From Octopus bimaculoides (lineage: Eukaryota), in NCBI RefSeq assembly GCF_001194135.2, contig NC_068985.1:65267233-65331232 (forward strand): a stretch of DNA of 64,000 bases, read 5' to 3'. A program made the position numbers and the translations under genes. Position 1 is the stretch's first letter, and each line of letters opens with the position of its first letter. The notes under the pieces were generated by a model. It had not been told where the DNA came from. It saw nothing but the letters and a program-made list of their open reading frames with translations, and searched no databases. Shown here piece by piece: positions 20,435-62,024 of the stretch.

Positions 20435-20475
<41 letters not shown>

Positions 20476-21108
20476 TCTTGATATTCTTTCAGAGCAAGCT
20501 GTTTTACATCTATTACACTATTTTACTTCTGTTTCTTGGCTCTGGTAAGGCCTCTCGGAACATTCACCATGTGAATGTTCCGAGCCCTCTCCCCACCCAC
20601 TGCCCATTTGCGAGCGCGCATTTTTTTCTTCATATTCGTTCCCAGAAAGTTGTTTTACACCTATTAGACTAATTTTTTAAAATTTTTGTCACCAGGTCAA
20701 ACGCTTTAGTTTGACCACCATTCTATAAAGCAGTGAGATGCGGGCCCTGAATGTGAANNNNNNNNNNAACACTATAGTTTAAAAGCCATGGACTGACGAT
20801 GTGTGACGATGTGAATGTTCTGAGTCCCCTCCCCACCCCGCCTTTCGCGAGAGCACATTTTTTTTTTTTCATATTCGTTCAGAGCAAGTCGTTTTACATC
20901 TATTACACTATTTTTCTTTTGTTTCTTGGCTCCAGTGAGGCATCTCAGAACATTCACACCGTGAATGTTCCAAGCCCTCTCCCTACGCCCCCCCCCCGTT
21001 CGCAAGCGCGCATTTTTTTCTTCATATTCATTCACAGCAAGTTGTTTTACACCTATTAGACTAATTTTTTAAAATTTTTGTCACCAGGTCAAACGCTTTA
21101 GTTTGACC

Positions 21109-21770
21109 ACCATTCTATAAAGCAGTGAGATGCGGGCCCTGAATGTGAAGGTTAGAAAGGAATGAGGCAAGTATTGCTCTGCTGGATGTATAATGTACAT
21201 GTTCAACAGAGTGCTAGTGTAAAGGAATTTGTTGCCATGTGCTCTGGTTTGGTCATGTAATGTATGGATGCCGACAGCTCCATAAAGAAGTACTGATCTC
21301 TCAAAGTAGATGAAACACATGGAAGTGGGAGACCCAGGAAGCCATGGGATGAATTACTAAAGAATGACCTCAAGATGCTGAACCTTTCAGGCAAGGTGAC
21401 AAAGGACTGAGATGCCTGGTACCTTGCTGTACTCAAGAAGACCTGTACTCTGCAGCAGAAATGTTAAGACTAGTCCCTCTGTTGGTTTAAAGCACTCATG
21501 GTGGTGCCATGTGAAAGCACCCATGTGGGTCCATGTAAAAATGCCTGTGCAATGCCATGTAAAAGCACCCATGTAGCATCATATAAAAGCATCTCTGCAG
21601 CGCCACATAAGAGCACCCAGCACACTCTGTAAAGTGATTTGTATTAGGAAGGGCATCCAGCCATTGAAACTATGCTAAATCAGACTAATCAAATCATTCA
21701 ACCCATGCCAGCATGGACAATGGACGTTAAAAGATGATGGTGATGATGATAATGATAATGATGATGATGA
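21109..21770 (+). mobile_element. RTE LINE 3' end, right half of the split copy
   Basis: Continues the RT C-terminus, GRPRKPWDE motif, 3' UTR repeats, (ATG)n tail. Confidence 0.8.
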
Positions 21771-26039: not shown

Positions 26040-26890
26040 TGAGATAAATGTTGGACATAAAAAGCATGGGATGTGGCGTGCAAAAGAGATATCTGTGCTG
26101 GTATGGTCATGTACTATGGATGGGTGAGGAGAGCTGTGTGAAAAAGTGCCACTCCCAAACAGTAGAAGGAACCCATGGTAGAGGGAGACCCAGGAAGACA
26201 TGGGATGAGGTGGTGAAGCATGACCTTCAAATGTTGGGCCTCACAGAGGCAATGACAAAAGACCTCTGGAGATATGCTGTGACTGAGAAGACCTGGCAAA
26301 TAAAGTGAGATCACAGCTGTAGCCTACACTAGTGTCGCATAACCAGCCCACTCAAAAAATGCCTTTGGATCGTGGGGTGACATGCCATGCTTGAGGAGAC
26401 CTATTGAGTCAAGTACATCAATACCAAAATCAAATCAAACCACAATCAAATGAAAATTGTAGTTGTAGCCGATGCCAGTGCTACCTGTCTGGCTCCCCGT
26501 GCCAGTGACACATAAAAAGCACCATCCAAATCTAGTTGATGCCAGCCCACTCACCCCGACTGGCTCCTGTGCCAGTGGCATGTAAAAAGCACCATCCGAG
26601 CATGACTGATGCCAGTGCTGCCTTGACTGGCTCCCGTGCCGGTGGCACGTAAAAGCACCATCCAAACATGGTCGATGCCAGACCCCTCTGGCTCCCATGC
26701 CGGTGGCACATAAAAAGCACCCACTACACTCTCAGAGTAGTTGGTGTTAGGAAGGGCATCCAGCTGTAGAAACACTGCCAGATCAGACTGGAGCCTCATG
26801 CAGACACCTGGCTTCCCAGACCCGTCGAACCATCCAACCCATGCCAGCATGGAAAATGGATGTTAAACGATGATGATGATAATGATGAAA
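26040..26890 (+). mobile_element. RTE LINE 3' end with ~60-bp tandem 3' UTR repeats
   Basis: LCWYGHV..GRGRPRKTWDEVVKHDL ORF; about four repeats of GATGCCAG..GGCTCCC..GGCACATAAAAAGCACC (26470-26720); (ATG)n tail. Confidence 0.85.
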
Positions 26891-28099: not shown

Positions 28100-29580
28100 T
28101 AGATTTCCTAATATTTTTAATTCAGTGAAATCTTTCATAAATATAGTATACACAGCTATAAGTAAATGTATTACTTAGTAATCTGAAAAGTGTAAGTGAG
28201 AAAAATTGAAAATCAATAGCAATGAATATTAGCTTGCGAAAAGAATTTTTCATTTTCCAATTTTTGAATGATTTCACAGTAATATGCAACATTTTCGATA
28301 TTCATGTTTTTACGAAAGGTTGAAGCTTTAGTGAAATATTTGGAAAGTATAACCTTCACGGCTATTAGTAAATGAATTTTAATGCATTACTTCTCAATCT
28401 GAGAAATGTGAGTGAGAAAAATTGAGTCACAAAACAAATTTTCATTTCACCATTTTTGAACGAATTCATGCTGATTTGCAACATTTTCGATTTACATGCT
28501 TTTTGTGAAAGGTTGAAGCTTCAGAGAAATGTTTGGTAAATACAATCTTCACAGCTATTAGTAAATATGTATTAACCTATTTATTCTCAATTTGACCAGC
28601 GTTGGTGAGAAACATTGAAAGTCACAAATATGCAATGGTATTAGCCTGAGAAAACAATTTTTCATTTTGCCATTTTCGAATGATTTCATGCTGCTTTGTA
28701 ACATTTTTGGTGTACATGTTTTCTGTGAAAGGTTGAAGCTTCAGGGAAATGTTTGATACATATAATCTTCACAGCTATTTCTAAATGAATATAAACTCAT
28801 TACATCTCAATCTGACAAGTGTTAGTGAGAAAAATTGAAAGTATATGCTGAATAACAGCCTGAGAAACCAACAATTTTTCATTTCAAAATTTTCAAGTAA
28901 TTTGATGCTGATTTGCAAATTTTTCATTTATATGATTTCTGAGAAAGGTGGAAGCTTCAGTGAAATATTTGGTAAACATAATCTTCACAGCTATTAGTAA
29001 ACATATATCAATTAACCCAATACTTTTCAATCTGAAGGGTATGTATGATTTTGCACTGATTTCTAACATTTTAGATATTAATGTTTTCTGAGAAAGGTTG
29101 AAGCTTCAGTGAAATATTTGGTAAATGTAATCATCACAGCTATTAGTAAATGAATTTTAACACATTATGTCTCAATTTGACGAGTGTGATTGAGAAAGTT
29201 TGACAGGCAAATGTTGAATATTAGTCTGAGAAAACAAAAATTTTCCATTTTGCAATTTTCGAATGATTTCACGCTGTTTGCAACATTTTTGATGTACATG
29301 ATTTCTGAGAAAGGTGGAAGCTTGAGTGGAATGTTTAGTAAATGTAATTTTCTCGGCTATTAGTAAATATATGTTAATTAACCCAATACTTCCTAATCTT
29401 ATGGGTATGAATGTAAAAATGGAAAGATTTTTCATATACCATTTTTTTTAATGATTTCAGGCTGATTTGCAACATTTTTAACAATCCTCACAGGTATTAG
29501 TTGATGTATATTCACCAATTATTTCTCCATCTGAAAAGTGTGAGAAAGTCACCAATTTCAAAAATGTAACTCAGAAACAT
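28100..29580 (+). repeat. Diverged ~217-bp tandem satellite, block 1 (about 7 units)
   Basis: GAAAGGT(T/G)GAAGCTT anchors at 28314, 28507, 28727, 28943, 29092, 29309 (spacings 193, 220, 216, 149, 217). Confidence 0.85.
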
Positions 29581-29589
29581 TAATGAGAC

Positions 29590-31870
29590 TTGGAAACACA
29601 AGCCCTAATCTAAACCTTAGTCCTCACCCTAAGAATAACCTTAACACTAACTATAAATCTATATCTAACCCTCAAGCTACCCATAACCCTAACACTAATT
29701 CCAACCCTAACACCAAACTTAACATTAACACTAACCATAAACCAACCCTAACCCTAAACGGCTACATGGTTGATGAAAACATTATATTTATCAGAATTCA
29801 CCGAAGTCACAACGTTTTTCACAAAACTCAAACTCACAAAATTTTGCAAATAAGCATGAAAAAACAACACAATTTGAAAATGCGAAATTCGTGTTTTCCA
29901 GTAGTTTTTTTACACTTTTAGATAGTTTTCATTTTTGCAAAACGCACTTTTCATTTTGAAGTCTNNNNNNNNNNNNNNNNNNNNNNNNNNNNNNNNNNNN
30001 NNNNNNNNNNNNNNNNNNNNNNNNNNNNNNNNNNNNNNNNNNNNNNNNNNNNNNNNNNNNNNNNGTGGTTTTGCAAAAACGAAAACTACCTAAAAATGTC
30101 TAAAATCGACTGGACCTAACACTAAACCACACCCAAACCCTAAAGCGAATCCTAATATTACACCTTACATTAACCATAACATTAACACTAACCACAATAA
30201 TAACAATAATAACATTAACCCTAAACCATAGACTAAACATGGCAGTAACTTTAGCCTCAAACTATAAATGTGATCCTAACCCTAACCTTTACACTAACCC
30301 TTACTCTAGCCCTCACCCTCAACCTCAACCCTTAAACTAACCCCAAACCCTAGGCTTACAACTAACCATAGCTCTGACCCTAATCGTAAAACCTAAACCT
30401 AAAATTAAAATTAAACCCAACTGTAACCCTAACACTAATCCTAACATCCAACCTTGAAACTAACTTTAAATTTAAACCTACCCTAACACTAACCTTTAAC
30501 CTAAATATGATGTTATCCTGAAACCAAGTGTAACCATAACTCTAATCCCAACAGCTAACACTAGCTCAACCTAACCCAAACCCAACCCTAAAGCTAACCT
30601 GAATCCTTACCTCAACCATAACCCTTCCCTGCACCTAAAACTAAAATTTATTGAAACCCTAACTCTAACACTAAACCTAACCCAATATATAACACTGCAC
30701 TAAACTTTACTCTAACCCTAATCCTAACCCTAACTCTTACTCTAAACCTAACCCTAACCATGAACTTAAACATGAAACTAACCTTAACATTAACCCTAAA
30801 CCTAAAACTATGCCTAACCCTAATCTCAAACTGAACCCTAATATTTAACTTAAACCTAGATCTAGACTCTGAACATAACCCTAACACTACAGAAAATCGA
30901 ATCCCAAACCTCACTGTAACCCTTACTCTAAACCTAGGACCTAATCATAAGCCTAATCCTAACTCTAATACCAAACTGAATCCTAAACCTAGACCTAACC
31001 ATAAACCTAGCACTAAATTAAAACCAATCCATGACCATCACTTGAAACCTAAACCTAAATGCTGCCATAAACTTATCTCTAGCCTTAATCCTAATTCCAA
31101 ACCTAACACTAAACCTAAGCCTAACCTGAATGCTGACACTACTCTAACCCTAGCCCTAACATTAATGCTAAACCTACCCCAAACCCTAACTTTCACCCTA
31201 TCCACAACCGTAACCCTAACCTAAACCCTACTCCTGAACCCTACTCCACACCTAAATCTAACCCCCAAATTATTCCCTATCCCAATCCCAAACCTTCAAC
31301 TGAATTCCAAATGTAACCCTAAACCTAAACCATACACTACTCTGAACCTTATACTATTCTATCTAACTCTAATTTTAACTCTAAATGTAACTTTTACCAT
31401 AACCCTAACCCTAACTCAAACTCTAATGGGAACCCTAAACCTAAATGTAACCCTAACCCTAGCTAACACTGACCCTATTCATAACTCTAAACCAATTGTT
31501 TCCTCTGAACTTAAATCTAACTTAACCCTATAGCCCTAATGCTAACCTAAAAATAACCAGGACCCCAGCCCTAGCCTGAACTTTAACATTAATTCTAACC
31601 CTAGCCATAGCATAACCTATCCCTACAGTAACCCTGAAACTAAACCTAATCCTAACCGTTTCCTTCCATAATATTAAACAGTACCAAAATTAGTCCTAAG
31701 ACTAATTTTAACCCTCAACTTACCCTAATGCTAAACTTAACCCTAACTCTTAAGTGAAACCTAACCCTAACATAAACATAAATTTACCTTTAACACTAAC
31801 CCAAAATTGAAACCCTTACTCTTATTCTAAACTTAACCCTAAACCTCATCAAAACTTAAGCCCTGGCCCT
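29590..31870 (+). repeat. Degenerate (CCCTAA)n-like hexamer array
   Basis: 6-bp periodic AACCCT/AAACCT/AACACT variants; interrupted by a MITE and a gap. Confidence 0.9.
29758..30112. mobile_element. Hairpin MITE-like insertion within the hexamer array
   Basis: TTTAGATAGTTTTCATTTTTGCAAAAC mirrored by GTTTTGCAAAAACGAAAACTACCTAAA across the N gap. Confidence 0.5.
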
Positions 31871-31874
31871 AACA

Positions 31875-32305
31875 GGGAGAAATGTTGAAGTTTCTATGAA
31901 ATGCTTTTAGTGATTGTATATCACATCTATTAATAAATGTATATCAACCCATTATTTCTCAATCTGATAAGTGTGAGTGAGAAAACTAAAATGTCACAAA
32001 TGTTCAATATTTGTCTGAGAAAATAACGATTATTTATTTTGCAATTGTTGAACGATTTAACGCGAATTTCCCACATTTTTGATGTTTATAATTTCAGAAG
32101 AACAAAACTTCTGAAAGGCTGTTAAATAAAATCTACTAGATATATATTAACACATCACTTCTCAGTGTGACAAGGGTGAGTGTGAGATGTAAAGTCTCTA
32201 ATGTTGAATATTAGCCTCGGAAAACATCCATGCTAGTTTTGAATGATTTCACACTGATATTCACCATTTTTTGTGTTCATGATTTCTAAGAAAATGTTAA
32301 GTTTT
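31875..32305 (+). repeat. ~217-bp satellite, block 2 (about 2 units)
   Basis: Same CTCAATCTGATAAGTGTGAGTGAGAAAA and GTTGAAG motifs, same orientation as block 1. Confidence 0.8.
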
Positions 32306-32309
32306 CGTG

Positions 32310-33640
32310 TTAGGGTTAGTTTAAGGGTGTGGTTTAGTGTAAGGTTTAGGTTTATAGTTAAAGTTAGGGTATGTGTTAGGGTTAGGATGTCTGCTAGGGT
32401 TAGGGTCAAGGGTGAGAATTAGGGTTAGGATTAGGGTTAGGATGAGGGTTAAGGATAGAGTTAAGATAGGTTTGGAGTTAGGTTTAGGGTTGATGTTAGG
32501 GTTATGGGTGGGGTTAGGGCTCCGGTTAGTGTTAGGGTTAAGGTTAGGTTTAGTGTTAGGATTAGGGTCAGGTTTAGAGTCAGGTTCATAGGTGAAGGTT
32601 TGTGTGAATGTCAGGTTTAGAGTTAGTGTTAAGTTTAGGGTTGGAACTAGGTTCACAGTAATGGTTAGGGTTTGGGTTAGGTTTAGGGCAAAGGTTAAAT
32701 TTAGGGTTTGGAGTTAGGATGTGGATAANNNNNNNNNNNNNNNNNNNNNNNNNNNNNNNNNNNNNNNNNNNNNNNNNNNNNNNNNNNNNNNNNNNNNNNN
32801 NNNNNNNNNNNNNNNNNNNNNNNNNNNNNNNNNNNNNNNNNNNNNNNNNNNNNNNNNNNNNNNNNNNNNNNNNNNNNNNNNNNNNNNNNNNNNNNNNNNN
32901 NNNNNNNNNNNNNNNNNNNNNNNNNNNNNNNNNNNNNNNNNNNNNNNNNNNNNNNNNNNNNNNNNNNNNNNNNNNNNNNNNNNNNNNNNNNNNNNNNNNN
33001 NNNNNNNNNNNNNNNNNNNNNNNNNNNNNNNNNGTGTTAGGGTTAAGGTTAGGTTTAGTGTTAGGATTAGGGTCAGGTTTAGAGTCAGGTTCATAGGTGA
33101 AGGTTTGTGTGAATGTCAGGTTTAGAGTTAGTGTTAAGTTTCGGGTTGGAACTAGGTTCACAGTAATGGTTAGGGTTTGGGTTAGGTTTAGGGCAAAGGT
33201 TAAATTTAGGGTTTGGAGTTAATATGTTAGAGTCATGGTGAGGTTTAGGATTAAGGTGAGGGTAAGGGTTATGGTGAAGGCTGAATTTAAGATTAGGGTT
33301 AAGGTATGGTCTAGGTTTAGGGGTAGGGTTAGATATTGGGTTAATGTTAGGTTTATGTTTATGTTAAGGGTTAGGTTTAGTGTTCGGTTATAGTTAGGGT
33401 TAGTTTAGGGTTATGGTTACAGCTAGGGATGGAGTTAGTGTTAGGATGGAGTTTAGAGTTAGAGGTAGGGTTAGGGTCAAGTTTAGGGTTCAATTTTGGT
33501 CTAGTGTTAGGGTTATGTTCAGGGTCTAGATCAAATCTAATTGTAGGATTAAAGGTTTGGGTAATTGTAATGTTAGAAGTAATGGAAGAATTACTGTTAG
33601 CAGTTTTGGTATAAGGTGAAGATTAGGTTTAGTGTGAGAG
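32310..33640 (+). repeat. Degenerate (TTAGGG)n-like hexamer array
   Basis: GGGTTA/GGTTTA periodicity; a sub-block is repeated on either side of the gap. Confidence 0.9.
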
Positions 33641-34620
33641 TTAGGGATAGTATGAGGATTCATGTTTCTGAGTCTGACTAATATTTCTGAGTTTCATTTC
33701 AAAATTTGTGATTTCAGTTTTTCTCACACTTGTCAGATGGAGAAGTATTGGGTTAATTAATATATAGCTGTGAAAATTATATTTACCAAACATTTCAGTG
33801 AAGCTTCCACCTTTCTCAGAAATCATGTGCATTGAATGTTACGAAGCAGCAGGAAATCATTCGAAAATTGTGAAATGATAAATTTTTTTCTCACACTATA
33901 TTTAGTATGTTGCAAATCAGTGGCTCATCATTTGAAAATTGCAATAGGAAAAATTGTTGTCTTCTCACTCATTTGTGAATGTCCATGTTTCTCACACACT
34001 TTTGTCTGATTGAGAAGTAATGGGTTAATGTACATCCATTGTTGCTGTCAAGATTATATTTATCAAACATTTCACAGCAGCTTCAACCTTTCTAAGAAAA
34101 CATAAACACAGAAAGTTTTGCAAAGTGGTGTGAAATCATTCAATCATTGTGATATAGAAAATAGTTGTTTTCCCATGCTAGTATTCAACATTAGTGACAT
34201 TGTTTTTCACACGCGCACTTTTCAGAATGAGAAATAATGGGTTAATATGCATCTGGTAGCTGCGAAGATTATGTTTGCCAAACATTTCACAGATGATGCT
34301 ACAATTCGTAGAAACTATTAACACTGAAAATGTTAGAAACCAGCGTGAAATCATTTGAAAATTGCAGAAGGAAAAATTTTGCTTTCTCTGGTAAATGTTT
34401 AACATCTGCAAGTTCCCATTTTTCTCACTCACACTTGTCGGATTGAGAAATAATGGGTTAATATATATCTCCAAGTATCTCTGAAGATGTTATTTACCAA
34501 TCATTTCATAGAAGCTTTAAGCTTTATTGAAAAACATGACTTATACATCTCCAAGTAGCTGTAATGATTACATTTACCAAATTTAGAAAACATGAACACT
34601 GAAAATGTTGCAAATCAGAA
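33640..34620 (-). repeat. ~217-bp satellite, block 3, inverted
   Basis: AAGCTTCCACCTTTCTCAGAAATCATG and CTCACACTTGTCAGATTGAGAA are reverse complements of block 1 motifs. Confidence 0.85.
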
Positions 34621-34624
34621 TGAC

Positions 34625-34770
34625 ATCAATTGTGAAAGGTAAAACCTATTACTAACTCTCACCCAAACCCTAAAATGAATCCTAACACTATTGCAAACCT
34701 AAATATTACTGTAACCACAATACTAACCGTAACATTCCCGTAACCATAATACTAACCCTAACAGTAACGG
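34625..34770 (+). repeat. Short degenerate (CCCTAA)n-like array
   Basis: ACCCAAACCCTAAAATGAATCCTAACACT..TAACCCTAAC. Confidence 0.7.
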
Positions 34771-34779
34771 TGGTTTCTA

Positions 34780-35740
34780 AACGGTGGTTTCTAAAAAAGA
34801 TTGAAGTTTCTGAGAATTGTCTGGTAGATATGATCTTTACATTCACTATGCAATGTATATTCACTTGTTGCTTCTCAATCTGACAATGTTGATTACAAAA
34901 AAGAAGCTTCTAATGTTGGATATTTGCCTTGGAAAACAATTACTTTTCATTTTTGCAATTTTTGAATGATTTTCTGCTGAGTTTTGGTGTACATGATTTC
35001 TAAGAAAGGTCGAAGCTTCTGTAAAATGTTTGATAAATATGATTATGACAGCTATATTAACCCATTGCATGTCAATCAGACAAGTGTGAGTGAGAAAAAT
35101 GGGAAGTTAGAAATGTTAAACATTTGCCAGAGAAAGCAAAACTTTATCATTTCACAAATCTTAAATGATTTCATGTTGATTTCGGTCTTCAGTAAAATAT
35201 TTGATTATATTTGGTAATATTTTACTCACTCACACTTGTCAGATTGAGACATAATAGTTGTGAGAAAAGTTGAAGTTTGGTGAATATAATCTTCACAGCT
35301 ATCAATCTGACAAATGTGAGTGAGAAAAATAAAGATTCACAAGTGCTTGAGAAAACAAGTTATTTATTTCACAGTTTTTGAAAGATTTACATGTTTAGTA
35401 TTTATGATCAAAGCTTCTGTGATGATTGGTAAACATAATTTTTAGAGCTCCTAGACATTATTTCAGTCTGATAAGTGTGAATGTGAAGCGTGCAAAGTCT
35501 CTAATGTTGAATATTAGCCCCGGAAAAAAAAACCCATCTTTCATATTTTTATGATTTCACAATGTAAAAATGTTGAAGCTTCTGTGAAATGCTTGATAAA
35601 TATAATTTTGACAGCAACATGAAAGTATGTAAGGAAAATGGAAATTCACAAATGTTCGATATTAACCACTAGGAGATGTATATTTATGCATTGCTTCTAA
35701 CTCTGACAATTGTGAGTGAGAAAAATTGAAATTGAATCCC
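34780..35740 (+). repeat. ~217-bp satellite, block 4
   Basis: GAAAGGTCGAAGCTTCTG and TCAGACAAGTGTGAGTGAGAAAAA motifs, forward orientation. Confidence 0.8.
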
Positions 35741-36206
35741 TAACTGCCACTTCTCACCCAACAACGTCTGTGCATCCATCTGATAGTTGGAAAATATCTA
35801 CACCAGTACCCTTATACTCTGTGTTGTGTTTTCAAATGCATGGATATAGGTGTCAAATTTGTTCCAATAACTATCGAGTAATAGATGGATGGATGGAGAG
35901 GGAGACAGACAGACAGACAGACAGACATATAGCTCGCTCCGGCCAGTCATGGTGTTGGCTGTCGGTGGCCGGAGAATCGACAGGCCAGCAACAGGCAGGC
36001 AGACAGACAGATGCTTCACTGGCAGTGAGCACTTTCACTTCTGACAGCTAATAGCATGATAGTGCCCTCATTTCTGTTACCGATCTAAACATTTAATCTC
36101 ACGTTTAAACACTGCTGTGTTTCTTTCAACTTTTTCCTAAAAACCTAATGAATTTGACCAGCATGATGTACTGCTGCATGTTCTCCCTCTCCCTCCCTAT
36201 TGTATT

Positions 36207-37106
36207 CTATCTCTCTCTCTCTCTCTCTCTCTGAATCACCACTTCTTCCACCATTTCCTCTTTGACTCGCGCGCGAATCCCAAACATATAACCAGCTCGC
36301 TTTCCAACACCATTTTGTACTGGAATCTCTATGCTAATAGAACCCACGACGAAGCTCCNNNNNNNNNNNNNNNNNNNNNNNNNNNNNNNNNNNNNNNNNN
36401 NNNNNNNNNNNNNNNNNNNNNNNNNNNNNNNNNNNNNNNNNNNNNNNNNNNNNNNNNNNNNNNNNNNNNNNNNNNNNNNNNNNNNNNNNNNNNNNNNNNN
36501 NNNNNNNNNNNNNNNNNNNNNNNNNNNNNNNNNNNNNNNNNNNNNNNNNNNNNNNNNNNNNNNNNNNNNNNNNNNNNNNNNNNNNNNNNNNNNNNNNNNN
36601 NNNNNNNNNNNNNNNNNNNNNNNNNNNNNNNNNNNNNNNNNNNNNNNNNNNNNNNNNNNNNNNNNNNNNNNNNNNNNNNNNNNNNNNNNNNNNNNNNNNN
36701 NNNNNNNNNNNNNNNNNNNNNNNNNNNNNNNNNNNNNNNNNNNNNNNNNNNNNNNNNNNNNNNNNNNNNNNNNNNNNNNNNNNNNNATGCTTGAACGGCG
36801 ACGCGTAGATCTGTGCTGCATCCAAGAAGTAAGATGGAGAGGAGGTTCTGCGAGGTTCCTCACAGGCAAAGAACACAGGTACAAGTTTTTCTGGGCAGGG
36901 AACACTGACGGAGTCGGGGGCTTAGGAATACTTCTAGCAGAGAAATGGGTTGATAAGGTAATCGAGGTAGTTAGAGTATGTGACAGAGTACTTAAGATTA
37001 GACTAGTGCTTCATCATAGGCTAGCTACTGTCATCTCAGCCTATGCCCCTCAACCGGGGCTCCCGGATGGGCTGAAAGACCAATTCTATGACACCCTCTT
37101 GCAAAG
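36207..37106 (+). mobile_element. RTE LINE 5' part with APE endonuclease, truncated
   Basis: RRRVDLCCIQEVRWRG..GVGGLGILL..VISAYAPQ..KDQFYDTL; ends abruptly at a G-rich hexamer array; 5' boundary uncertain. Confidence 0.85.
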
Positions 37107-37330
37107 GGTGAGGTTTACATTGAGTGATAGGTTTAGGATTACGTTTAGGGTTAGTGTTTTTGAGTTGGGAGTAGGTTTAGATTTAGGGTTAAGGTTAGAG
37201 TTAGGGATAGATTTGGAGCTAGGTTTTGGGTGAAGGTTAGAGTTAGGTTTAGGTTTATGGTTAATGTTAGTGTTAGGTTTTCTTTGCGCTTTAGGGATAG
37301 GTTTAAGGTTAGCGTTAATACTATGGTCAG
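37106..37330 (+). repeat. Degenerate (TTAGGG)n-like array
   Basis: TTTAGGGTTAAGGTTAGAGTTAGGG periodicity. Confidence 0.8.
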
Positions 37331-37668: not shown

Positions 37669-40600
37669 CAGCGATGTGGAACCTGCGGCCTTCTGGGCCA
37701 TCAAGTGTGGCCATTGGTATATTTTCTTCTTTTTTTGAGATTGAATATTTTTTGTCTAAAATCATTATATGCCTTAACCCTTTCGTTACTATATTTCTGA
37801 CCAAAATACACCCCTCATGAGTTTCAATTAAATTCTAAAATAATCATGAATTTAGACTAGTCTCATTAAACACCTGTAACTTTTTTATTTCTCAACATAT
37901 TAATGTGATATTTGGAACATAATTAAAGAAAGGGTTCTTAATCAATTCTATTGCATAATTTTTGTCTCTAAGTTCTCCACGTNNNNNNNNNNNNNNNNNN
38001 NNNNNNNNNNNNNNNNNNNNNNNNNNNNNNNNNNNNNNNNNNNNNNNNNNNNNNNNNNNNNNNNNNNNNNNNNNNNNNNNNNNNNNNNNNNNNNNNNNNN
38101 NNNNNNNNNNNNNNNNNNNNNNNNNNNNNNNNNNNNNNNNNNNNNNNNNNNNNNNNNNNNNNNNNNNNNNNNNNNNNNNNNNNNNNNNNNNNNNNNNNNN
38201 NNNNNNNNNNNNNNNNNNNNNNNNNNNNNNNNNNNNNNNNNNNNNNNNNNNNNNNNNNNNNNNNNNNNNNNNNNNNNNNNNNNNNNNNNNNNNNNNNNNN
38301 NNNNNNNNNNNNNNNNNNNNNNNNNNNNNNNNNNNNNNNNNNNNNNNNNNNNNNNNNNNNNNNNNNNNNNNNNNNNNNNNNNNNNNNNNNNNNNNNNNNN
38401 NNNNNNNNNNNNNNNNNNNNNNNNNNNNNNNNNNNNNNNNNNNNNNNNNNNNNNNNNNNNNNNNNNNNNNNNNNNNNNNNNNNNNNNNNNNNNNNNNNNN
38501 NNNNNNNNNNNNNNNNNNNNNNNNNNNNNNNNNNNNNNNNNNNNNNNNNNNNNNNNNNNNNNNNNNNNNNNNNNNNNNNNNNNNNNNNNNNNNNNNNNNN
38601 NNNNNNNNCATTATCGTTCACCACGTACTTTTGTAGCTCATTCATTCTTTTCTTCGATATCTCCATATCTTCTGTTGAAAAACCTTCAAATTCGGAATCA
38701 CTGCTTGATAGCATGAAACTCCTCTCCATCTTCAAAGTTGAAAAAAATTAACGCCGCAAAAAATGTGGAAAAAAATCTTCCAAAATTCACTGAGTTCAAA
38801 TATCACGCCAAATAATGTCAGAGACAATAACTCAACTGTTTGCAAAGTGAAATCAGGTGTTTGAACGAATGTACTAACGAAATTTGGGTTCAAATATACA
38901 TTTAAATAACAATGGGTATGCTCGGCCGGCTACGGCCGGGTTAGTCTTATGAACCAAAAAATGTTTCGGCCGGCTACAGCTGGGTTAGTAACGAAAGGGT
39001 TAAACTTACAATACACACACATAGACAAAAGGAAAGTTAACCGTGTTCAGTGATGTCGCTCCTAGAGATTGGAAGCATTTTTCTTTGAACCCAATGAATT
39101 TAAACTCAAAGCAACAAGTATATAAAGGTAATATTTCCCTGTCAGCTACACCAGCCTAGTGAGTGTAAGTGACTTCACATATGATACATGAAGAGTTCTT
39201 GCCTTTACTTAGTAATTGTGTAGTCTTGGCCAACTTCATACTGACTTGTTCTGTGAGATTGAGTTAGTTATAGCCTTATTTGAAACTGTAAATTCATCAG
39301 TGTGTGCATTAATTTTACAAACTTACTTGTTATCATTGAGACTTGATAAGTGATACAGTGATCGTATTCAATGCTACTCTGCTAAGCCAGCTGCACACTG
39401 TTTCAGAGAAAACGGTTTTAGACAAGATACTATCAATCAGTGTCCAAAACCATGTTCTTGGAATCTTGGTCATAACTTCAACAATTGTCATTATTGGAAA
39501 CCATCAATATTTGACATTATTTCTGTAACAATGGTAAATAATAGTACTAATTACAGAAATAAAATTATAGCTAATCTAGATGTTGTTCAGTCTCGAATGG
39601 TAGTAACAATTGCTAAAGTCATGGTTTTGGATGACTTTTATTTGGGTCAGTGTGTGGCCGTCTTTACTAATGCATTAGTAAACTTTTATTTTTCCATAGC
39701 TTTTCAGAATAAATACATTTCTTTTTAACCCATAATTATGTCAAAAAAATTTAAATGAACTTTCATAGTAGAAAACAGGATCCTCAATGAAGAATGGGAA
39801 CTGCAATATCTTTTAGTAAATAGTGGAGGCAAAATGTCTCGCTTGTTTTGTGATACCACAATTCTAACGGTTAAGAAATTCAATGCACGCCAACATTATG
39901 CTCTTCATAAAGACAATAAATATGCCAAATTAGGGCGTGAGTCTTGAAAGATAGCATTGCAGAAATTGAAAGATGGAAAACAAAAGCAAAGACAATTTTT
40001 CCAATTTGCGTTGCACCAAGGGAATGCTAAGACAGAACACTTTCCTCAGCTTACGAGGGTAATGAGTGAAAATGAATCTTCTGAATCTTTTGAAGAAATA
40101 TAAGTCAGTTTTAGACTCATTAATAGAAGAATATAATAAAAGATTCAATGACTTTAAAAAACATAACATCACTCTGAAACTTGCTTTTCAGCCTCTCTTA
40201 GTTGATGTATCAGAGGCTCTTGAATAGTTATAAGTGGAGTTTATTGAAATGTCTGAAGATAATATCCTCAAATCTTCGTTCGACAAGATGGAAAATCCCA
40301 TCGAAATTTGGAATAATGTGGTAGAATATCCTCATCTTTGTGTACATGCATGGCGACTAATTTCCTACTTTTCTTCAACATACTGTTGTGAATCTACATT
40401 TTCGTACTTGACGCAAATCAAGAATTCGCTGAAAATGCAATTGACAGATGAGCATTTGGAGGACCAATTGAAACTAAGAACCATTATGTTAGAGCCTGAT
40501 GTCAAAATGCTTTCTCAAAAAAAAGCAAATTGAAAGAAGTCATAAATTTGTATAAAAAGTACCTACTTACCTAAATTAAATATTTGAAAATATTTTCTCA

Positions 40601-42186: not shown

Positions 42187-44773
42187 CCCTTTCATTACCA
42201 AACCGCCCAAAGCTGCCCGAAAAAAATTTTGGTTCATGTGAACAAGCCGCCCAAAACTGCCCGTAATCACATATTCATATTTAAATGAGAATATCTGAGC
42301 AAATCTCGTTAGTACATTCGTGAAAACACGTGATTATACTGCGCAAACAGTTCAGCTATAGTTTTGTACGACGATCGACGTGTTATTTTAATTTTATGAA
42401 TTTTGTGAGATTTTTTTCCAAATTTGTTCCTGTTGTGTTTTTAAAATTTGTAATTCTGACAAAAAAATGGATACAAATTNNNNNNNNNNNNNNNNNNNNN
42501 NNNNNNNNNNNNNNNNNNNNNNNNNNNNNNNNNNNNNNNNNNNNNNNNNNNNNNNNNNNNNNNNNNNNNNNNNNNNNNNNNNNNNNNNNNNNNNNNNNNN
42601 NNNNNNNNNNNNNNNNNNNNNNNNNNNNNNNNNNNNNNNNNNNNNNNNNNNNNNNNNNNNNNNNNNNNNNNNNNNNNNNNNNNNNNNNNNNNNNNNNNNN
42701 NNNNNNNNNNNNNNNNNNNNNNNNNNNNNNNNNNNNNNNNNNNNNNNNNNNNNNNNNNNNNNNNNNNNNNNNNNNNNNNNNNNNNNNNNNNNNNNNNNNN
42801 NNNNNNNNNNNNNNNNTTTTCTGAAGAAACTGGACCAAGTCACAGTCTTACCCAGGAGAGCAAAGCTTCGAACTATTTCTTTTTGCTTTTTCCGATGTAC
42901 CTATTTGAAATGATTACGGCAGAAACAAACCGTTACGTTGAATGTAAACAAAGCATAAAAAAGGATAGTTTGTGGTTTCCCACAAACTTGAATGAAATTA
43001 AGGCATATTTTGCCATAAATATTATTATGGGCATTAGAAAGTTACCCAGAATAACAAATTAAGTATAATAACGAGGACACGATTTTTGAAATTAACTCAA
43101 TATCTACATGTAAGAGACACGAGCAGTACACCAGTACGTGGAGAACCAGACTTTGATCCCTTATTTAAAATAAGACCCCTCATTGACTGTGTTCAAAACA
43201 CATATAAAACAGTTTATAGACTAGGGAGACATCAATTGATGAAGGTATGGTGGGCTATAAAGGCCGAGTGCGTTTTCGACAGTATATGCCAGGAAAGCCC
43301 ACAAAATGGGGGATCAAAGTTTGGAAGATTTGTGAATCAAATACTGGGCACTGCTCTGGATTTGAATTTTACACAGGAAAAAGAGACAATTATATAAGTC
43401 AGCATGGCCTAGGGTATGATGTGGTCTGGAATTTATCACTTCGATACCATAACCAGAGCCGTATAATATTTTTTGACCAATTTTTCAGTACAGTCAAACT
43501 TGCAGAGAATTTAGATACTGTGGCAACACATTCATGTGCTACAGTGATCGCTAGTAGAAAAGGACTGCCGTTGGATATAAAAAAAGCAAAATTAAAAAAA
43601 AGGTGAAATAATTCAACGGCAGAAGGGAAATTTGCTAGCGACTGCATACAGAGATAAGAGACAGATTAATTGTCTGTCTACCTGTGCACGGCCACATGTG
43701 GATGAAAATGGCATGCCATTTGTGAACCTCGATTATAACAGGTACATAGGTAGTGTAGATCGGCTGAATCAGATGATGTCTTATTATCCAGTTGGCAGAC
43801 CGGGGAATAAATGGTGCCGATACCTGGTTTGGTATATAGTAAATATGAGTATTACTAATGCATGTATACTATATACCAAATCGGGGCCGGCTCAAAAGCG
43901 ATGCAACCATCTGCAGTTCCATGCAGATGTAGCAACGCAACTAAGAGCTGGTTATTCCTCAAAAAAAATAACTGTAGGGAGAAAAAGCAAAGCCTGCCAG
44001 AGAGATATCCCTCTGAATTCAGCCGATCTCTGTAAATTAGAAAAAAAATCGAGGGTCGCAAATGCCTTCATCAAAAAAGGAAAGCTCCTAGTGGAAGAGC
44101 TGTTGGAACAACTTTCCAATGTGCATTCTGCAAGGTTGCATTATGTAGAGCAGGGTGCTTTTACAAGTTTTCATGATAGAAATATTGCTTGATTTTTATA
44201 AATATTTTCAAATTTACTTCGTTTTTATTTTTCTTTATGTTTAATTTTAATTTACCTGTAAGGTGAGTGACGAATTTTGATTAATTTCTTTTGTAAATCA
44301 TTATTGTATATTTCTGTGTATCTATGTATATGGGAGAGCTTATTTAATCTAGTCGATGGTGTGTGTGTATTTTGTTTTCTAGTTTTCTTCACAGACAAAT
44401 TCTAGTCTTTTGTTTTATTTATACCTTTATGGTACACCTGTCTTTTGTGTGTTAAATTCACCTGATGAATCCAGTAATGTGCACAACTCTTCTATAATAA
44501 TATTTTGTTGTATACCCAGCTGAATATTAGCTAATAACCCATTTTCTATAGCAATGTTTGAACAAAAATTTTAATAATTTTATATTTTGTTGAATTTACC
44601 TGTATTTACCTGTAATTAGAGTCACTTTGTGACAAAAATTTTGGTATAGAATTGGTTGAGAACCTTTCATTAAATTATCTTCCAATGAAACCAGACTAAA
44701 TTTATGATTATGTTAGAAATTAATTGAAACACATATGGGGTGTATTTTGGTTAGAAATATGGTAACGAAAGGG
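42187..44773 (+). mobile_element. piggyBac transposon, full-length termini, decayed transposase
   Basis: TTAA TSDs, CCC..GGG ends; DPLFKIRPLID, YKGRVRFRQYMPGKPTKWGIKVW, FFDQFF, DYNRYIGSVD, KWCRYL, Cys-rich tail; frameshifted. Confidence 0.93.
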
Positions 44774-45513
44774 TTAAAAAGGCAGAAAGAAGTGACATCA
44801 TGCTGCGGACCATATCTGTGAATGACCTTCCGCTAATTAGATGAAACCTATTCTGAATGCAGTACAGTGCCAGATGTTAGAGAAATACTGCACTAAAAGC
44901 CTCACCCAAGAATTATAGTATATCAATCATTGTTGGAGACTGAAGAAAAGACCATTATTGAGATGCTTTCACTGATATGCTCATTTTGTGTTGATGAGGC
45001 CCAACAACTAGAGCAATGTTGAGGGCTCTAGCTAACTGCTGCACATGATTAAGGGAGGTATGGTATGATGGCATTTTCTTGTTATGATTAGTATTTGCAT
45101 ATCCAGAACAGCATATCTCAGTTGGAAGATACTTTTAAACTAACTGTTTATGAAGTTAGCATGTATGTAGTGTGTAGTGTTTAAGCTGCAAGAGGATGGT
45201 GCATGGTTTGAGAATGTTAAGGAATGAAGGGTAATGTTCTCTGTTTAAGAGAGCTGTGTCAACATGGTGTAATAATGTGATCTGATAGGAACCCCAGATG
45301 GTGGAGTAGTTTTGATAGGATAATGTGTATATAATAGGAATATTTATTTTGGATTTCACTCTCTTTGATAATTCTTCTATTGTGTATTGTGATTAGTTAT
45401 TATCAATGTGTATGTGTATACTGTGTGTGTATACTGTGTGTGTGTGTCAGAAGTATGTAAATTTGAATACAGAATAAAGAATGAAGTAAAATATTCTTTG
45501 ATGAAAACATGTC

Positions 45514-46912: not shown

Positions 46913-47240
46913 TAGTTAAAATATAAAAATATTTTTAAAATCTTTACTCCATTCTGGTGTAAAATCATCCTCGCTGTCGCCATCGCTGCTTTCAGTTTCG
47001 GATACAGAAATATCCAATTCATTATCGTTCACCACATGCTTTTGTAGCTCATTCATTCTTTTCTTCGATATCTCCATATCTTCTGTTGAAAAACCTTCAA
47101 ATTCGGAATCACTGCTTGATAGCATGAAACTCCTCTTCGTCTTCAAAGTTGAAAAAAAAATCTTCCAAAATTCACTGAGTTCAAATATCACGCCAAGCAA
47201 TGTCGGATACAATAACTCAACTGTTTGCAAAGTGAAATCA
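46913..47240 (-). mobile_element. piggyBac 5' fragment, same subfamily as 37778-38999
   Basis: Near-identical SSDSEFEGFSTEDMEISKKRMNELQK; cut off at 47240 by the Penelope pseudo-LTR. Confidence 0.85.
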
Positions 47241-47754
47241 TTGGAGGGACTATAAGAATCACAAACAAACCTCGGTGCTATACCAGCATGCCAAAGAACA
47301 ACATGGTGGTGTACTGAACCGAATTAGCATAGAAATCCTGTCTAGACACACTAGTGACACATCGTTGCGGCAAATACAAGAGTCAGTCCTCATAACTGAA
47401 ACACAACCAATTTTGAATAGCAAGTACACGTAGATAAAAGCCTTACAATTACCCATGGTTGCGGATGCTGTTCACACATAAAATACAGAATGCGAACGTA
47501 AATAAAAAAAGATGCATTTACGAAGAAAACAGAAAATAATAGAAAGGAAACTAAAACCAAGTCCAAAGTCTCTATCTTATCTGATATGAACGAAATTGTT
47601 ACAAATACACTTATGGATGCACATACTTACATATAAGCACGAACACATAAGTGCGTGCACACATACGAGCTTGCACACACTCACATGCTCATACCGAACA
47701 ATTTCAAAACAACGCCAAATCATACATTCAAAATAAATGGAAGTGGAGAGACAA

Positions 47755-47795
47755 GTTACTGAAGAGATTGCAAGAGTGCAATGAAATGATTTAAC
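47755..47795 (+). ncRNA. Minimal type I hammerhead candidate, upstream pseudo-LTR
   Basis: GUUA-CUGAAGA-G-AUUGCA agag UGCAAU-GAAA-UGA-UU/UAAC. Confidence 0.6.
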
Positions 47796-48639
47796 AAAAA
47801 AACTAAATACTATTTATAAATTAATAAAGGACTGAACCAGTGCATGTGTTTATTACCGGCATAATGCCTCTCCCAAGGTTTAATTGTATTTCTTTCAACA
47901 NNNNNNNNNNNNNNNNNNNNNNNNNNNNNNNNNNNNNNNNNNNNNNNNNNNNNNNNNNNNNNNNNNNNNNNNNNNNNNNNNNNNNNNNNNNNNNNNNNNN
48001 NNNNNNNNNNNNNNNNNNNNNNNNNNNNNNNNNGAAAGACACTGTGTTCTGCTGTCTAAAAATCAAAATAACAACCAGACAGCTCTACTTTATTAAAAAA
48101 TGCATCACTTCCAAGTTATACACGAATGCCATCAACTCAGCTGTAAGAAGACTGAGGCTCACAGAGGGCCAAGCAGGCAGACTAAGACACACACTACTGG
48201 TCAACATCAAAAAGAGAATATACAAAGAAATTAGCCAGTACCAAAAGAGAAAAAGGTTCTTACAACAAAACCTCAGGAACATGATAACACCGTATGAGGA
48301 GTTAAAACTCGCAGATATCATCCATCAGGAATATAACTATAATTAACCGAGCCTGTAACAAACACTTCAGCAACAAATTGAAATGGATGAGACAACAACA
48401 ACAACACACAGGAAACAAAGACAAATACCCAAATAACATTGATGGGATTCTGATGTCGGACTGCGAACTACAGGGGATATACAATGCCATCGCAAACAAA
48501 AATAATCACACACCTGGAATGTATGGCTCAGTACTACTGGATGAAAATGAAGCGTGTGCCCTGGGATTACCACCGAAATATGCCGTGTATAATAAGGTCA
48601 GTAAGATCAATTGTTTACTAAGATTAGATGGAGTTAGGA

Positions 48640-48930
48640 CACCACTACAACAACAACTCAGTTATAAGAAACCACCACGACAGTATTATGCATAATATTC
48701 ACAATGCAACCAACAGTAACAATGGAAATGGCAACAACAACTACACCTCCACCACCACCAACAACAATAATGATTACACTACCACCATCAGCAACAGCAA
48801 TGATAACAGCAATAGCAACAACCACACGAACAGCACCATACACACCAGGAACAACAGCAACAACAACAGCGACAGCAACAACAGCAGCCACACATACAAG
48901 GATAACAACAATGGCAACAACAACACCTTC
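48640..48930 (+). repeat. AAC/AGC/ACC trinucleotide low-complexity block inside the PLE
   Basis: Asn/Ser/Thr-rich in the frame of ORF 48628..49038. Confidence 0.85.
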
Positions 48931-51562: not shown

Positions 51563-51603
51563 GTTACTGAAGAGATTGCAAGAGTGCAATGAAATGATTT
51601 AAC
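51563..51603 (+). ncRNA. Minimal type I hammerhead candidate, downstream pseudo-LTR
   Basis: Identical to 47755-47795. Confidence 0.6.
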
Positions 51604-61780: not shown

Positions 61781-62024
61781 ATATGACTATCCATTAAAAA
61801 ATTTAACTGTTGAAAGGAAAGCAAAAGCCTGAATTCCATAAATAACAAAAAAAATCTTTTAAATCAATGACTGCAAAGAGACTGTGCTGAATACCAACAT
61901 GAGAAAAGCCCCNNNNNNNNNNACCACCCGTGGACACTCAAATGAAATGACTTTCCATGATTCTCTCACTGTATCCATGTATGTCATGGAAGCTGTTATG
62001 ATGTTTGCTAACATGTTCATTTAA

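What the first reader, a model, noticed from the sequence alone, without database searches (positions are those of the whole stretch)
28100..37330. 9-kb locus of alternating 217-bp satellite blocks and telomere-like arrays with switching polarity
Seen order: sat(+) 28.1-29.6k, C-rich hexamers 29.6-31.9k, sat(+) 31.9-32.3k, G-rich hexamers 32.3-33.6k, sat(-) 33.6-34.6k, C-rich 34.6-34.8k, sat(+) 34.8-35.7k, unique DNA plus RTE piece, G-rich 37.1-37.3k. The module C-rich + sat + G-rich occurs twice, with hexamer arms pointing outward like a miniature chromosome. Both times the satellite starts at about the same phase (..TTGAAGTTTCT). The arrays are very degenerate but keep 6-bp periodicity. Inference: a composite foldback- or Helitron-type repeat with telomere-like arms and a tandem core, not a simple interstitial telomere.
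Basis: partly seen in the sequence, partly recalled or inferred. Interest (0 to 1): 0.7.

Follow-up and report, generated by a model that had tools for sequence, protein, structure and literature searches.

The report
Decayed satellite and telomere-repeat mosaic
This stretch of an octopus-type genome is an old, non-coding patchwork of a roughly 200-bp satellite and worn-out TTAGGG telomere-like tracts that was copied locally in both orientations; it is a real but fairly ordinary kind of repeat scar, not a demonstrated mobile element.

Summary
A 173-220 bp AT-rich satellite (monomers about 70-85% alike) occurs only at 28121-35742. It alternates with tracts whose consensus is TTAGGG (70-77% identical to a perfect array, strong 6-bp periodicity, strict strand asymmetry).

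Four corrections:
- The "C-rich 29.6-31.9k" block contains a missed inverted satellite piece (29771-29964). That piece forms a palindrome across gap 29965-30064.
- Gap 32729-33033 is an unmerged overlap (flanks 99.5% identical), so the G-rich block is about 848 bp, not 1.35 kb.
- Block I (37.1-37.3k) lies on another contig, so its polarity rests on scaffolding.
- The "C-rich + satellite + G-rich" module is clean only once.

The satellite-side junctions are copies of each other: satellite end into C-rich at 29590 and, inverted, at 33660; C-rich into satellite at the same phase at 31870 and 34785. The best reading is local direct and inverted duplication of a [telomere-like tract + satellite array] unit, followed by neutral decay.

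No transposon termini, target-site duplication or transposase were found. A tandem-repeat-carrying Helentron-like or foldback-like element is not excluded, because genome-wide copies could not be searched here.

The parts
28121..29589 (+). Block A: satellite array, + orientation, about 7 monomers. It starts at profile position ~88 next to unique DNA and ends in junction J2.
   Evidence: nhmmer hits; TRF periods 193/220; J2 alignment
29590..29759 (-). Block B1: degenerate telomere-like tract, C-rich on the + strand (TTAGGG on the - strand), 170 bp.
   Evidence: 73% identity to a perfect TTAGGG array, lag-6 periodicity 0.57
29771..29964 (-). It runs into gap 29965-30064.
   Evidence: nhmmer E=6.6e-6 for 29771-29885 on the - strand; reading of the sequence
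29897..30114 (.). Palindrome across the gap: arms 29897-29947 and 30065-30114, 84-85% complementary. The right arm is a satellite end in + orientation that abuts block B2.
30110..31870 (-). Block B2: degenerate telomere-like tract, C-rich on the + strand, 1.76 kb.
   Evidence: 71.5% identity to perfect TTAGGG, 28 exact TTAGGG against 2 expected
31871..32307 (+). Block C: satellite, + orientation, about 2 monomers. It starts at junction J1 (phase ~62-73) and ends at phase ~87-95 directly against the G-rich tract.
   Evidence: sequence
32308..33660 (+). Block D: degenerate telomere-like tract, G-rich on the + strand. Apparent length is 1353 bp, but 32529-33033 is an assembly duplicate plus gap, so the true length is about 848 bp.
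   Evidence: overlap of the gap flanks
33661..34644 (-). Block E: satellite, - orientation, about 4.5 monomers. Its left end is junction J2 in inverted orientation; its right end (phase ~6) abuts C-rich block F.
   Evidence: 64% alignment of 33385-34538 to 29760-28495
34645..34765 (-). Block F: short C-rich telomere-like tract. Its best match is the first 135 bp of B2.
   Evidence: score 48 against median 25
34766..35742 (+). Block G: satellite, + orientation, about 4.5 degenerate monomers. It is preceded by a 14-bp x2 repeat and junction J1, and contains a 38-bp-stem hairpin at 35218-35331.
   Evidence: DNA fold -27.9 kcal/mol, z = -7.1
35743..35775 (-). Short C-rich remnant (ATCCCTAACTGCCACTTCTCACCCAAC) directly after block G. 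It resembles the hexamers next to J2 in block D.
   Evidence: read from the sequence; weak
36787..37098 (+). Fragment of an RTE-type retrotransposon (N-terminal part of the endonuclease domain). Its start is lost in the gap and it is cut off on its 3' side at the G-rich tract.
   Evidence: Pfam Exo_endo_phos, E=0.0044, below the cut-off; 71-89% identical octopus proteins, one named craniofacial development protein 2-like; intact relatives continue past the cut
37105..37330 (+). Block I: G-rich telomere-like tract, 226 bp, on a different contig from blocks D-G.
   Evidence: gap flanks unrelated

Best explanation
The locus is an old, non-coding composite repeat in an octopod genome. Its building unit was a TTAGGG-type tract (C-rich strand up) followed by a short array of a 173-220 bp AT-rich satellite that begins at a fixed phase and ends in a characteristic terminal variant.

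This unit was copied several times within a few kilobases, both head-to-tail and inverted. At least three further inversion or fold-back events followed: at 29760, at the palindrome in gap 29965-30064, and at 32305 and 34644, plus a small hairpin at 35218-35331. Everything then decayed at roughly the neutral rate.

The switching polarity of the hexamers is therefore a by-product of inverted duplications of the whole satellite-plus-hexamer unit. It is not the signature of designed terminal inverted repeats.

Shown: the blocks, their orientations, the shared junctions, and the assembly artefact in block D. Inferred: the order of events, the neutral decay, and the mechanism of inversion. The likely mechanisms are fold-back or template switching at hairpin-prone satellite and at telomere-like tracts, which are known to stall replication forks. 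The tracts are now too degenerate to act as telomere-protein or G-quadruplex sites.
For: 1. Junction J2 (satellite end into C-rich) at 29590 and, reverse-complemented, at 33660 shares an extra ~25-bp segment (CTCAGAAAY-ATTARTSAGACTYRGAAACAY). I did not see this segment at the ends of the internal monomers I read. The two junctions align through it, within a 1.29-kb, 64% inverted alignment.
2. Junction J1 (C-rich into satellite) at 31870 and 34785 shares CCCTAACAG, the same satellite phase, and the variant GAAGTTTCT where the other monomers I read mostly have GAAGCTTC. Block A starts within ~25 bp of that phase. By my own estimate, three starts within about 30 of 215 positions would occur by chance roughly 2% of the time.
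3. Block F best matches the start of B2.
4. Ages are similar. Divergence from consensus at A/T sites is 15% in the satellite and 15-19% in the T-T-A positions of the hexamers.
5. The switches at 29760, 32305 and 34644 lie within contigs, and contigs 2 and 3 overlap by 188-194 bp at 98.5-99.5%.
6. Local inverted duplications recur at small scale: palindrome arms 84-85% complementary, and a hairpin with z = -7.1.
7. No coding capacity or RNA family was found. There is only one G3-type quadruplex motif and two perfect (CCCTAA)2 in about 3 kb of tracts.
Against: - The hexamer sides of the junctions show no positional homology above the background similarity of any two hexamer stretches. Common descent of the junctions therefore rests on the satellite sides and short linkers only.
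- Monomers show no colinear block-to-block correspondence.
- Fixed start and end phases of the satellite arrays are also what a mobile cassette would show.
- The number of polarity switches (at least five in 9 kb) is high for unaided rearrangement.
- Only one 64-kb window of one draft assembly was available.
Confidence: 0.5

Rival explanations
1. The unit is a non-autonomous mobile element that carries tandem repeats. One candidate is a Helentron/HINE or DINE-1-like element, with the order left flank, eroded microsatellite, tandem-repeat array, short right flank. The other is a foldback element of the Tetris type. On this reading the locus is a cluster of tandem, nested and rearranged insertions.
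For: - The order 'microsatellite-like tract, then tandem-repeat array with a fixed first-repeat phase, then a short characteristic end' parallels the mollusc Cg_HINE architecture described in PMC7492417. There the left flank ends in a short, eroded microsatellite of 3-8-nt motifs, followed by 100-500-bp repeats and a conserved 60-bp right flank.
- The host is a mollusc.
- A fourth satellite fragment inside block G also begins at phase ~62 (35257, read).
Against: - No left-flank sequence lies between the satellite end and the hexamers; the linker is at most ~50 bp and partly satellite-like.
- I saw no 3' palindrome on reading J2.
- No subterminal inverted repeats or target-site duplication could be defined.
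- The tracts reach 1.8 kb, against the 'short' microsatellites of HINEs.
- There is no second, independent insertion context in the window: the satellite occurs nowhere else in 64 kb.
- No Rep/helicase or transposase lies nearby.
Confidence: 0.2
2. The locus is a fossil of chromosome-end biology. Breaks inside a (sub)telomeric satellite were healed by telomerase. Telomere-capped ends were later fused or copied (breakage-fusion-bridge or break-induced replication, as in yeast Y'-TG1-3 or human subtelomeric islands). The result was a set of satellite blocks separated by telomere tracts, which later became internal and decayed.
For: - Three kinds of junction have the polarity expected of healed ends. 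These are C-rich into satellite (31870, 34785), satellite at phase ~95 into G-rich (32305), and satellite at phase ~125 into G-rich on the other strand (29760).
- The breakpoints fall at different satellite positions, and near-perfect TTAGGG repeats lie right at those junctions.
- Fold-back palindromes are the hallmark of breakage-fusion-bridge cycles.
- Degenerate TTAGGG-like blocks in subtelomeres, and ITS flanked by satellite DNA, are documented (PMC6410037).
Against: - Junctions J2 and E|F have the opposite polarity (telomere tip joined to satellite) and need extra fusion steps.
- J1 occurs twice with shared derived features, so it is a copied junction and not two independent healings.
- Chromosomal position is unknown.
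- Nothing else in the window is telomere-like, apart from two tiny CCCTAA dimers near 58.6k and 63.1k.
Confidence: 0.15
3. The alternating polarity is largely an artefact of a gappy short-read draft assembly (chimeric contigs or wrongly oriented contigs).
For: - There are 13 gaps in 64 kb.
- One gap in the locus is a failed overlap merge.
- One gap sits in a palindrome centre.
- Block I's orientation depends on scaffolding across gap 36359-36786.
Against: - Three switches lie inside contigs.
- Copies differ by 15-40%, so they are effectively unique for read assembly.
- The palindrome arms are 84-85% complementary, not 100%.
- The contig 2/3 overlap confirms their relative orientation.
Confidence: 0.1

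Closest known systems
Interstitial telomeric sequences associated with satellite DNA (heterochromatic and subtelomeric ITS)
   Same: [quoted passage not shown] They are viewed as scars of rearrangement and as fragile, rearrangement-prone sites (review PMC6410037).
   Different: The tracts here are 0.1-1.8 kb, not the very large cytologically visible blocks of het-ITS. They are much more decayed (70-77% to consensus) and interleaved with one specific satellite at recurring junctions in both orientations. Chromosomal position is unknown.
Tandem-repeat-carrying non-autonomous Helentrons of molluscs and flies (Cg_HINE; from my own knowledge also pearl/CvA/DTC84 and DINE-1)
   Same: The order is an eroded microsatellite, then a short array of repeats of similar size (100-500 bp in HINEs), then a short conserved end. 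The host is a mollusc (PMC7492417).
   Different: No left flank, subterminal inverted repeats or 3' palindrome was recognised. The microsatellite is telomere-like and up to 1.8 kb. No dispersed copies could be examined.
Foldback elements with repeat-built arms (Drosophila FB from my own knowledge; Tetris as cited in PMC7492417)
   Same: Long inverted arms are made of tandem repeats around a central segment, and hairpin-forming potential is strong.
   Different: The arms here are unequal (about 1.6 kb against 2.3 kb homologous parts). They end in different satellite phases. No terminal sequence or target-site duplication is present, and there is only one instance.
Fusion-type ITS such as human 2q13-q14
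   Same: Degenerate telomere arrays of opposite polarity lie close together inside a chromosome.
   Different: A fusion gives head-to-head G-rich then C-rich arrays in direct contact. Here the G-rich and C-rich tracts are separated by 0.9 kb of satellite (blocks D-E-F), and the other pair points outward (blocks B-C-D).
Telomere-repeat-associated retroelements (SART/TRAS of Bombyx, Athena-type Penelope-like elements; from my own knowledge)
   Same: An element with a constant 3' junction is flanked on both sides by telomere repeats of one polarity and repeated head-to-tail (A-B-C and F-G have this look). Penelope-like elements are present in the window.
   Different: The 'element' is a non-coding satellite array. 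There is no poly(A) or other retroelement tail. The Penelope-like copies in the window carry a GIY-YIG endonuclease and are 13-20 kb away. Both polarities occur.

Membership tests
Interstitial telomeric sequence (ITS), degenerate type | Tandem array whose consensus is the lineage's telomere motif (TTAGGG) | tested here: met
   The in-phase weight matrix gives T .85, T .81, A .83, G .65, G .61, G .59. Exact TTAGGG is 12-25 times over expectation. That TTAGGG is the telomere motif of molluscs is from general knowledge, not tested here.
Interstitial telomeric sequence (ITS), degenerate type | Internal, not terminal, position | tested here: met
   More than 26 kb of TE-rich DNA lies on both sides within the window. 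Position on the chromosome is not testable.
Fusion ITS (2q13 type) | Head-to-head arrays, (TTAGGG)n directly abutting (CCCTAA)n | tested here: not met
   The G-rich block D and the C-rich block F are separated by the 0.93-kb satellite block E. B and D face outward.
Foldback transposon (FB/Tetris type) | Two inverted arms with matching outer termini | tested here: not met
   Inverted homology exists. However, the outer ends are at satellite profile positions 88 (28121) and 6 (34644).
Foldback transposon (FB/Tetris type) | Target-site duplication flanking the arms | tested here: not met
   For the B-C-D module the flanks are inverted copies of each other (J2), not direct repeats.
Foldback transposon (FB/Tetris type) | Multiple dispersed copies in the genome | not testable with these tools
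   No eukaryotic genome collection is searchable by DNA. There are no relatives in the protein collection or in JGI metagenomes.
Helitron / Helentron (autonomous) | Rep-helicase gene | tested here: not met
   No ORF of at least 110 aa lies between 12 kb and 43 kb except hexamer translations, runs of gap letters and a microsatellite.
Non-autonomous Helentron (HINE / DINE-1 type) | Microsatellite segment upstream of a central tandem-repeat array | tested here: met
   C-rich hexamer tract into satellite at a fixed phase, seen twice (31870, 34785). Compare the architecture in PMC7492417.
Non-autonomous Helentron (HINE / DINE-1 type) | Conserved left flank with subterminal inverted repeat, and right flank (~60 bp) with subTIR plus palindrome | tested here: inconclusive
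   A shared ~25-50 bp end follows the last monomer (J2). I saw no palindrome in it by eye, and no non-satellite left flank precedes any hexamer tract. No dedicated inverted-repeat scan of J2 was run, and with only two copies no consensus can be built.
Functional telomere-like or G-quadruplex array | Runs of intact TTAGGG, or four or more G3 tracts | tested here: not met
   There is one G3-type quadruplex motif (32499) and two perfect (CCCTAA)2 in about 3 kb of tracts.

The most novel reading that the evidence does not exclude
In octopods a short satellite array with defined ends travels together with a telomere-like microsatellite as one cassette. This could be a Helentron/foldback-like or telomere-repeat-targeting non-autonomous element that seeds both satellite DNA and interstitial telomere tracts. 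Alternatively, the locus is the decayed relic of an ancestral chromosome end that went through breakage, telomerase healing and fold-back fusion, marking a karyotype rearrangement in cephalopods.
Probability: 0.15. Interest if true: 0.55.

Novelty: new member of a known kind. Interest (0 to 1): 0.27.

Why it matters
If it is only a decayed local mosaic, it matters mainly as annotation. It shows that polarity switches in telomere-like tracts can arise from inverted duplication of a satellite-plus-tract unit, and it flags one unmerged overlap and one palindrome-centred gap in the assembly.

If the same cassette proves to be dispersed, it would link satellite DNA, interstitial telomere tracts and mobile elements in cephalopods, whose repeat landscape is poorly described; three literature searches found no octopus report.

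If it marks an old chromosome end, it would be a landmark for cephalopod karyotype evolution.

Tried and rejected
- Colinearity of monomers between blocks: pairwise identities of 66-89% show no diagonal pattern. There is no higher-order repeat and no block-to-block order.
- Positional homology of the hexamers next to each junction: none above background, except block F against the start of B2. An apparent alignment of the two C-rich-into-inverted-satellite junctions is therefore not taken as evidence.
- A 'symmetrical break at the TGAAGCTTCA palindrome healed on both sides' idea: dropped. The junctions lie 23-30 bp left and ~10 bp right of the palindrome centre, and they overlap by ~35 bp.
- Reading the fragment right of gap 29965-30064 as a continuation of the inverted satellite: rejected. 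Its match to the reverse complement of the left arm scores 34, against 13 for the alternative.
- Hammerhead or other structured RNA in the satellite: no Rfam family. Only generic hairpin hits at 35217-35332, far below gathering scores.
- Coding potential: the 111-112 aa ORFs at 29583 and 32321 are translations of the hexamers (P-N/L-T repeats).
- Relatives of a 98-aa satellite ORF in the 5.8-billion-protein collection: none.
- Exact-pattern scan of JGI metagenome contigs with the best conserved 25-mer: none.
- The one octopus locus fetched (Octopus sinensis, L001): no satellite match.
- Whether the RTE fragment continues to the right of the G-rich tract: it does not. The best Octopus sinensis relative is a paralogous copy, not an orthologous locus.

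Full report
**Setting**

The window is a gappy draft assembly of an animal genome, with 13 runs of N in 64 kb. It is full of transposon remains:
- Penelope-like elements with reverse transcriptase and GIY-YIG domains;
- mariner and piggyBac transposase fragments;
- RTE-type pieces.

The closest relatives of two of these proteins are annotated in Octopus vulgaris and Octopus sinensis at 55-89% identity. The host is therefore an octopod or a close relative. The species is not established.

Yes, in outline.

*Satellite.* A profile built from the best monomers finds the satellite only between 28121 and 35742:

| Block | Coordinates | Orientation |
|---|---|---|
| A | 28121-29545 | + |
| C | 31877-32302 | + |
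| E | 33714-34644 | - |
| G | 34785-35731 | + |

Monomers are 173-220 bp apart (TRF periods 193 and 220). They are 66-89% identical over their alignable parts.

*Hexamer tracts.* Between the satellite blocks lie tracts with extreme strand asymmetry: GC skew reaches about -0.8 or +0.86. They have strong 6-bp periodicity. Identity at lag 6 is 0.50-0.58, against 0.13-0.25 at lag 3 and about 0.29 in satellite or control DNA.

Aligned to a perfect array, the tracts are 70-77% identical to TTAGGG. The T-T-A positions are kept at 81-85% and the three G positions at 59-65%, replaced mostly by A or T. C makes up only 2-7% at any position. Exact TTAGGG is 12-25 times more frequent than composition predicts. 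These are decayed telomere-type repeats.

**The gaps, tested first**

| Gap | Flanks | Conclusion |
|---|---|---|
| 32729-33033 | Direct duplicate: 32529-32716 equals 33034-33221 at 99.5% (98.5% over 194 bp) | Most simply two contig ends that overlap and were not merged. This confirms the order and orientation of the two contigs. About 505 positions are artefactual, so the G-rich tract is about 848 bp. |
| 29965-30064 | Reverse complements of each other at 84-85% over 47-51 nt | The gap sits in the centre of a palindrome. The arms are too different to be the same reads placed twice. What lies in the centre is unknown. |
| 36359-36786 | Unrelated | The left side is unique DNA. The right side begins inside the open reading frame of an RTE-type endonuclease whose upstream ~50 residues, present in an Octopus vulgaris relative, would fall in the gap. 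The 37105-37330 G-rich tract is on its own contig, and its polarity relative to the rest rests on scaffolding only. |

The 'C-rich 29.6-31.9k' block is not continuous. After 170 bp of hexamers there is an inverted satellite piece at 29771-29964 (E=6.6e-6 for 29771-29885). It runs into the palindrome described above. On the far side a satellite end in + orientation (30065-30110) abuts the 1.76-kb tract B2.

The module 'C-rich + satellite + G-rich' is clean only once (30110-33660). In the second case, block G is followed directly by a short C-rich remnant (35743-35775). Then come about 0.6 kb of unique DNA, a gap and the retrotransposon fragment before the G-rich tract.

**Junctions**

Expressed with the satellite in its own + orientation, there are recurring joints.

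*J1, C-rich into satellite.* It occurs at 31870 and 34785. Both copies have CCCTAACAG. Both enter the monomer at nearly the same phase: profile positions 73 and 65 by nhmmer, about 57-62 by eye. Both carry GAAGTTTCT where the other monomers I read mostly have GAAGCTTC. Block A starts within about 25 bp of that phase, but next to unique DNA.

*J2, satellite end into C-rich.* It occurs at 29590 and, reverse-complemented, at 33660. Both copies carry an extra ~25-bp segment, CTCAGAAAY-ATTARTSAGACTYRGAAACAY, that I did not see at the ends of the internal monomers I read. They align through it, inside a 1.29-kb inverted alignment of 33385-34538 with 29760-28495.

These shared derived features indicate that the junctions are copies of ancestral junctions and not independent events.

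The other junctions are single:
- satellite phase ~95 into G-rich at 32305;
- satellite phase ~125 into G-rich, read on the minus strand, at 29760;
- G-rich into satellite phase ~6, read on the minus strand, at 34644.

The hexamers beside the junctions show no positional homology above the 60-64% that any two stretches of these tracts share. The exception is block F, whose best match is the first 135 bp of B2 (score 48, median 25).

**Age**

Divergence from consensus at A/T sites is 15% in the satellite and 15-19% at the T-T-A positions of the hexamers. At G/C sites it is 24% in the satellite and 35-41% at the hexamer G positions, with an excess of G-to-T changes.

Satellite and tracts therefore look about equally old. 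The faster loss of G may reflect an AT-biased mutation spectrum and damage-prone G runs, or original variant repeats; this is inference. The palindrome at ~30.0k (15% divergence between arms) and the hairpin at 35218-35331 (38-bp stem, -27.9 kcal/mol, z = -7.1) look younger.

**Most likely explanation (confidence about 0.5)**

A unit of [telomere-like tract + short satellite array with fixed start and end] was duplicated locally, head-to-tail (B2-C and F-G; A-B1) and inverted (A-J2-B1 against D-J2-E). It was further rearranged by fold-back or inversion events and then decayed.

The polarity switching follows from inverted copying of whole units. The apparent 'miniature chromosome' (B2-C-D) is where two such copies face each other.

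The switches at 29760, 32305 and 34644 are inside contigs, and the copies are 15-40% diverged, so collapse or chimerism of near-identical repeats is unlikely.

The tracts are no longer functional telomere-like DNA: they hold one G3-type quadruplex motif and two perfect dimers in about 3 kb.

**Rivals**

1. *A tandem-repeat-carrying mobile element (about 0.2).* Mollusc Helentron derivatives (Cg_HINE) have the order left flank ending in an eroded microsatellite, tandem repeats of 100-500 bp, then a 60-bp conserved right flank with a palindrome (PMC7492417). The order 'tract, fixed-phase array, characteristic end' here is similar. However, I found no left flank, subterminal repeats, 3' palindrome or target-site duplication. 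The tracts are far longer than HINE microsatellites, and the window offers no independent insertion. A foldback element fails on unequal arms with different outer phases and on inverted rather than direct flanks.
2. *A fossil chromosome end (about 0.15).* Several junctions have exactly the polarity of breaks healed by telomerase, at varying satellite positions. Fold-back palindromes are typical of breakage-fusion-bridge cycles. But J2 and the 34644 junction have the opposite polarity, and J1 is a copied junction.
3. *Assembly artefact (about 0.1).* See the gap results above.

**Comparison with the known**

The locus belongs with degenerate interstitial telomeric sequences flanked by satellite DNA and transposons, which are regarded as scars and promoters of rearrangement (PMC6410037).
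- It is not a fusion-type ITS, because there is no head-to-head contact.
- It resembles HINE/DINE-1-type and foldback-type repeat carriers in layout, but it fails or cannot be tested on their defining terminal features.
- No report of such a composite in octopus was found.

**What could not be done**

It needs a searchable octopod genome, and none is available here. The attempts through the protein collection, a metagenome pattern scan and one fetched Octopus sinensis locus found nothing.

**Verdict**

This is a real, old, non-coding satellite/telomere-repeat mosaic shaped by direct and inverted local duplication, with one assembly artefact inside it. It is a new member of a known kind and of modest interest (0.27). 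There is a roughly 15% chance that it represents something more notable: a mobile satellite-plus-telomere-repeat cassette, or a fossil chromosome end.

Noticed in passing
window 47239-51696: Penelope-like retroelement on the + strand. It has 650-bp direct terminal repeats (47239-47888 and 51048-51696, 96.9% identical), RT-like ORFs at 48996-50436 and a GIY-YIG ORF at 50736-51224. Gap 47901-48033 lies at the end of the left repeat. Closest proteins are from Octopus vulgaris at 55-62% identity.
   Followed up: partly
window 4010-7400: Second Penelope-like copy on the - strand (RT ORF 5606-6538). It is bracketed by ~500-bp inverted repeats (4010-4507 against 6898-7400, 96.8%) that each carry a near-identical ORF beginning MVGCSDIDLL.
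   Followed up: partly
window 43247-44192 and 62829-63194: piggyBac-type transposase fragments (DDE_Tnp_1_7, E=1.6e-24). The two places share a nearly identical peptide (VNLDYNRYIGSVD.LNQMMSYYPVGRPGNKW). A perfect (CCCTAA)2 lies at 63138-63149, inside the second fragment's span.
   Followed up: no
window 20475-21149: The 10-N gap at 20758-20767 is flanked by a 285-bp direct repeat at 90% identity (20475-20757 against 20865-21149). This is a tandem duplication or another assembly join problem.
   Followed up: no
window 26042-26886, 7559-8066, 21237-21750: A dispersed repeat (67-80% identical copies) lies just left of the locus. An embedded 66-70-bp tandem repeat at 26471-26721 is related to the 62/115-bp tandem repeat at 54057-54331.
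   Followed up: no
window 35218-35331: A 38-bp-stem hairpin formed by an inverted duplication of satellite positions ~146-183 inside block G (DNA fold z = -7.1). It draws weak, sub-threshold microRNA-precursor hits in Rfam, which I take to be generic hairpin matches.
   Followed up: yes
window 11294-11929: Mariner-type transposase fragment (Transposase_1, E=2.6e-17).
   Followed up: no
window 37774-37953, 44624-44777, 62021-62200: A short dispersed repeat (87-88% identical copies) lies just right of the locus, next to gap 37983-38608.
   Followed up: no
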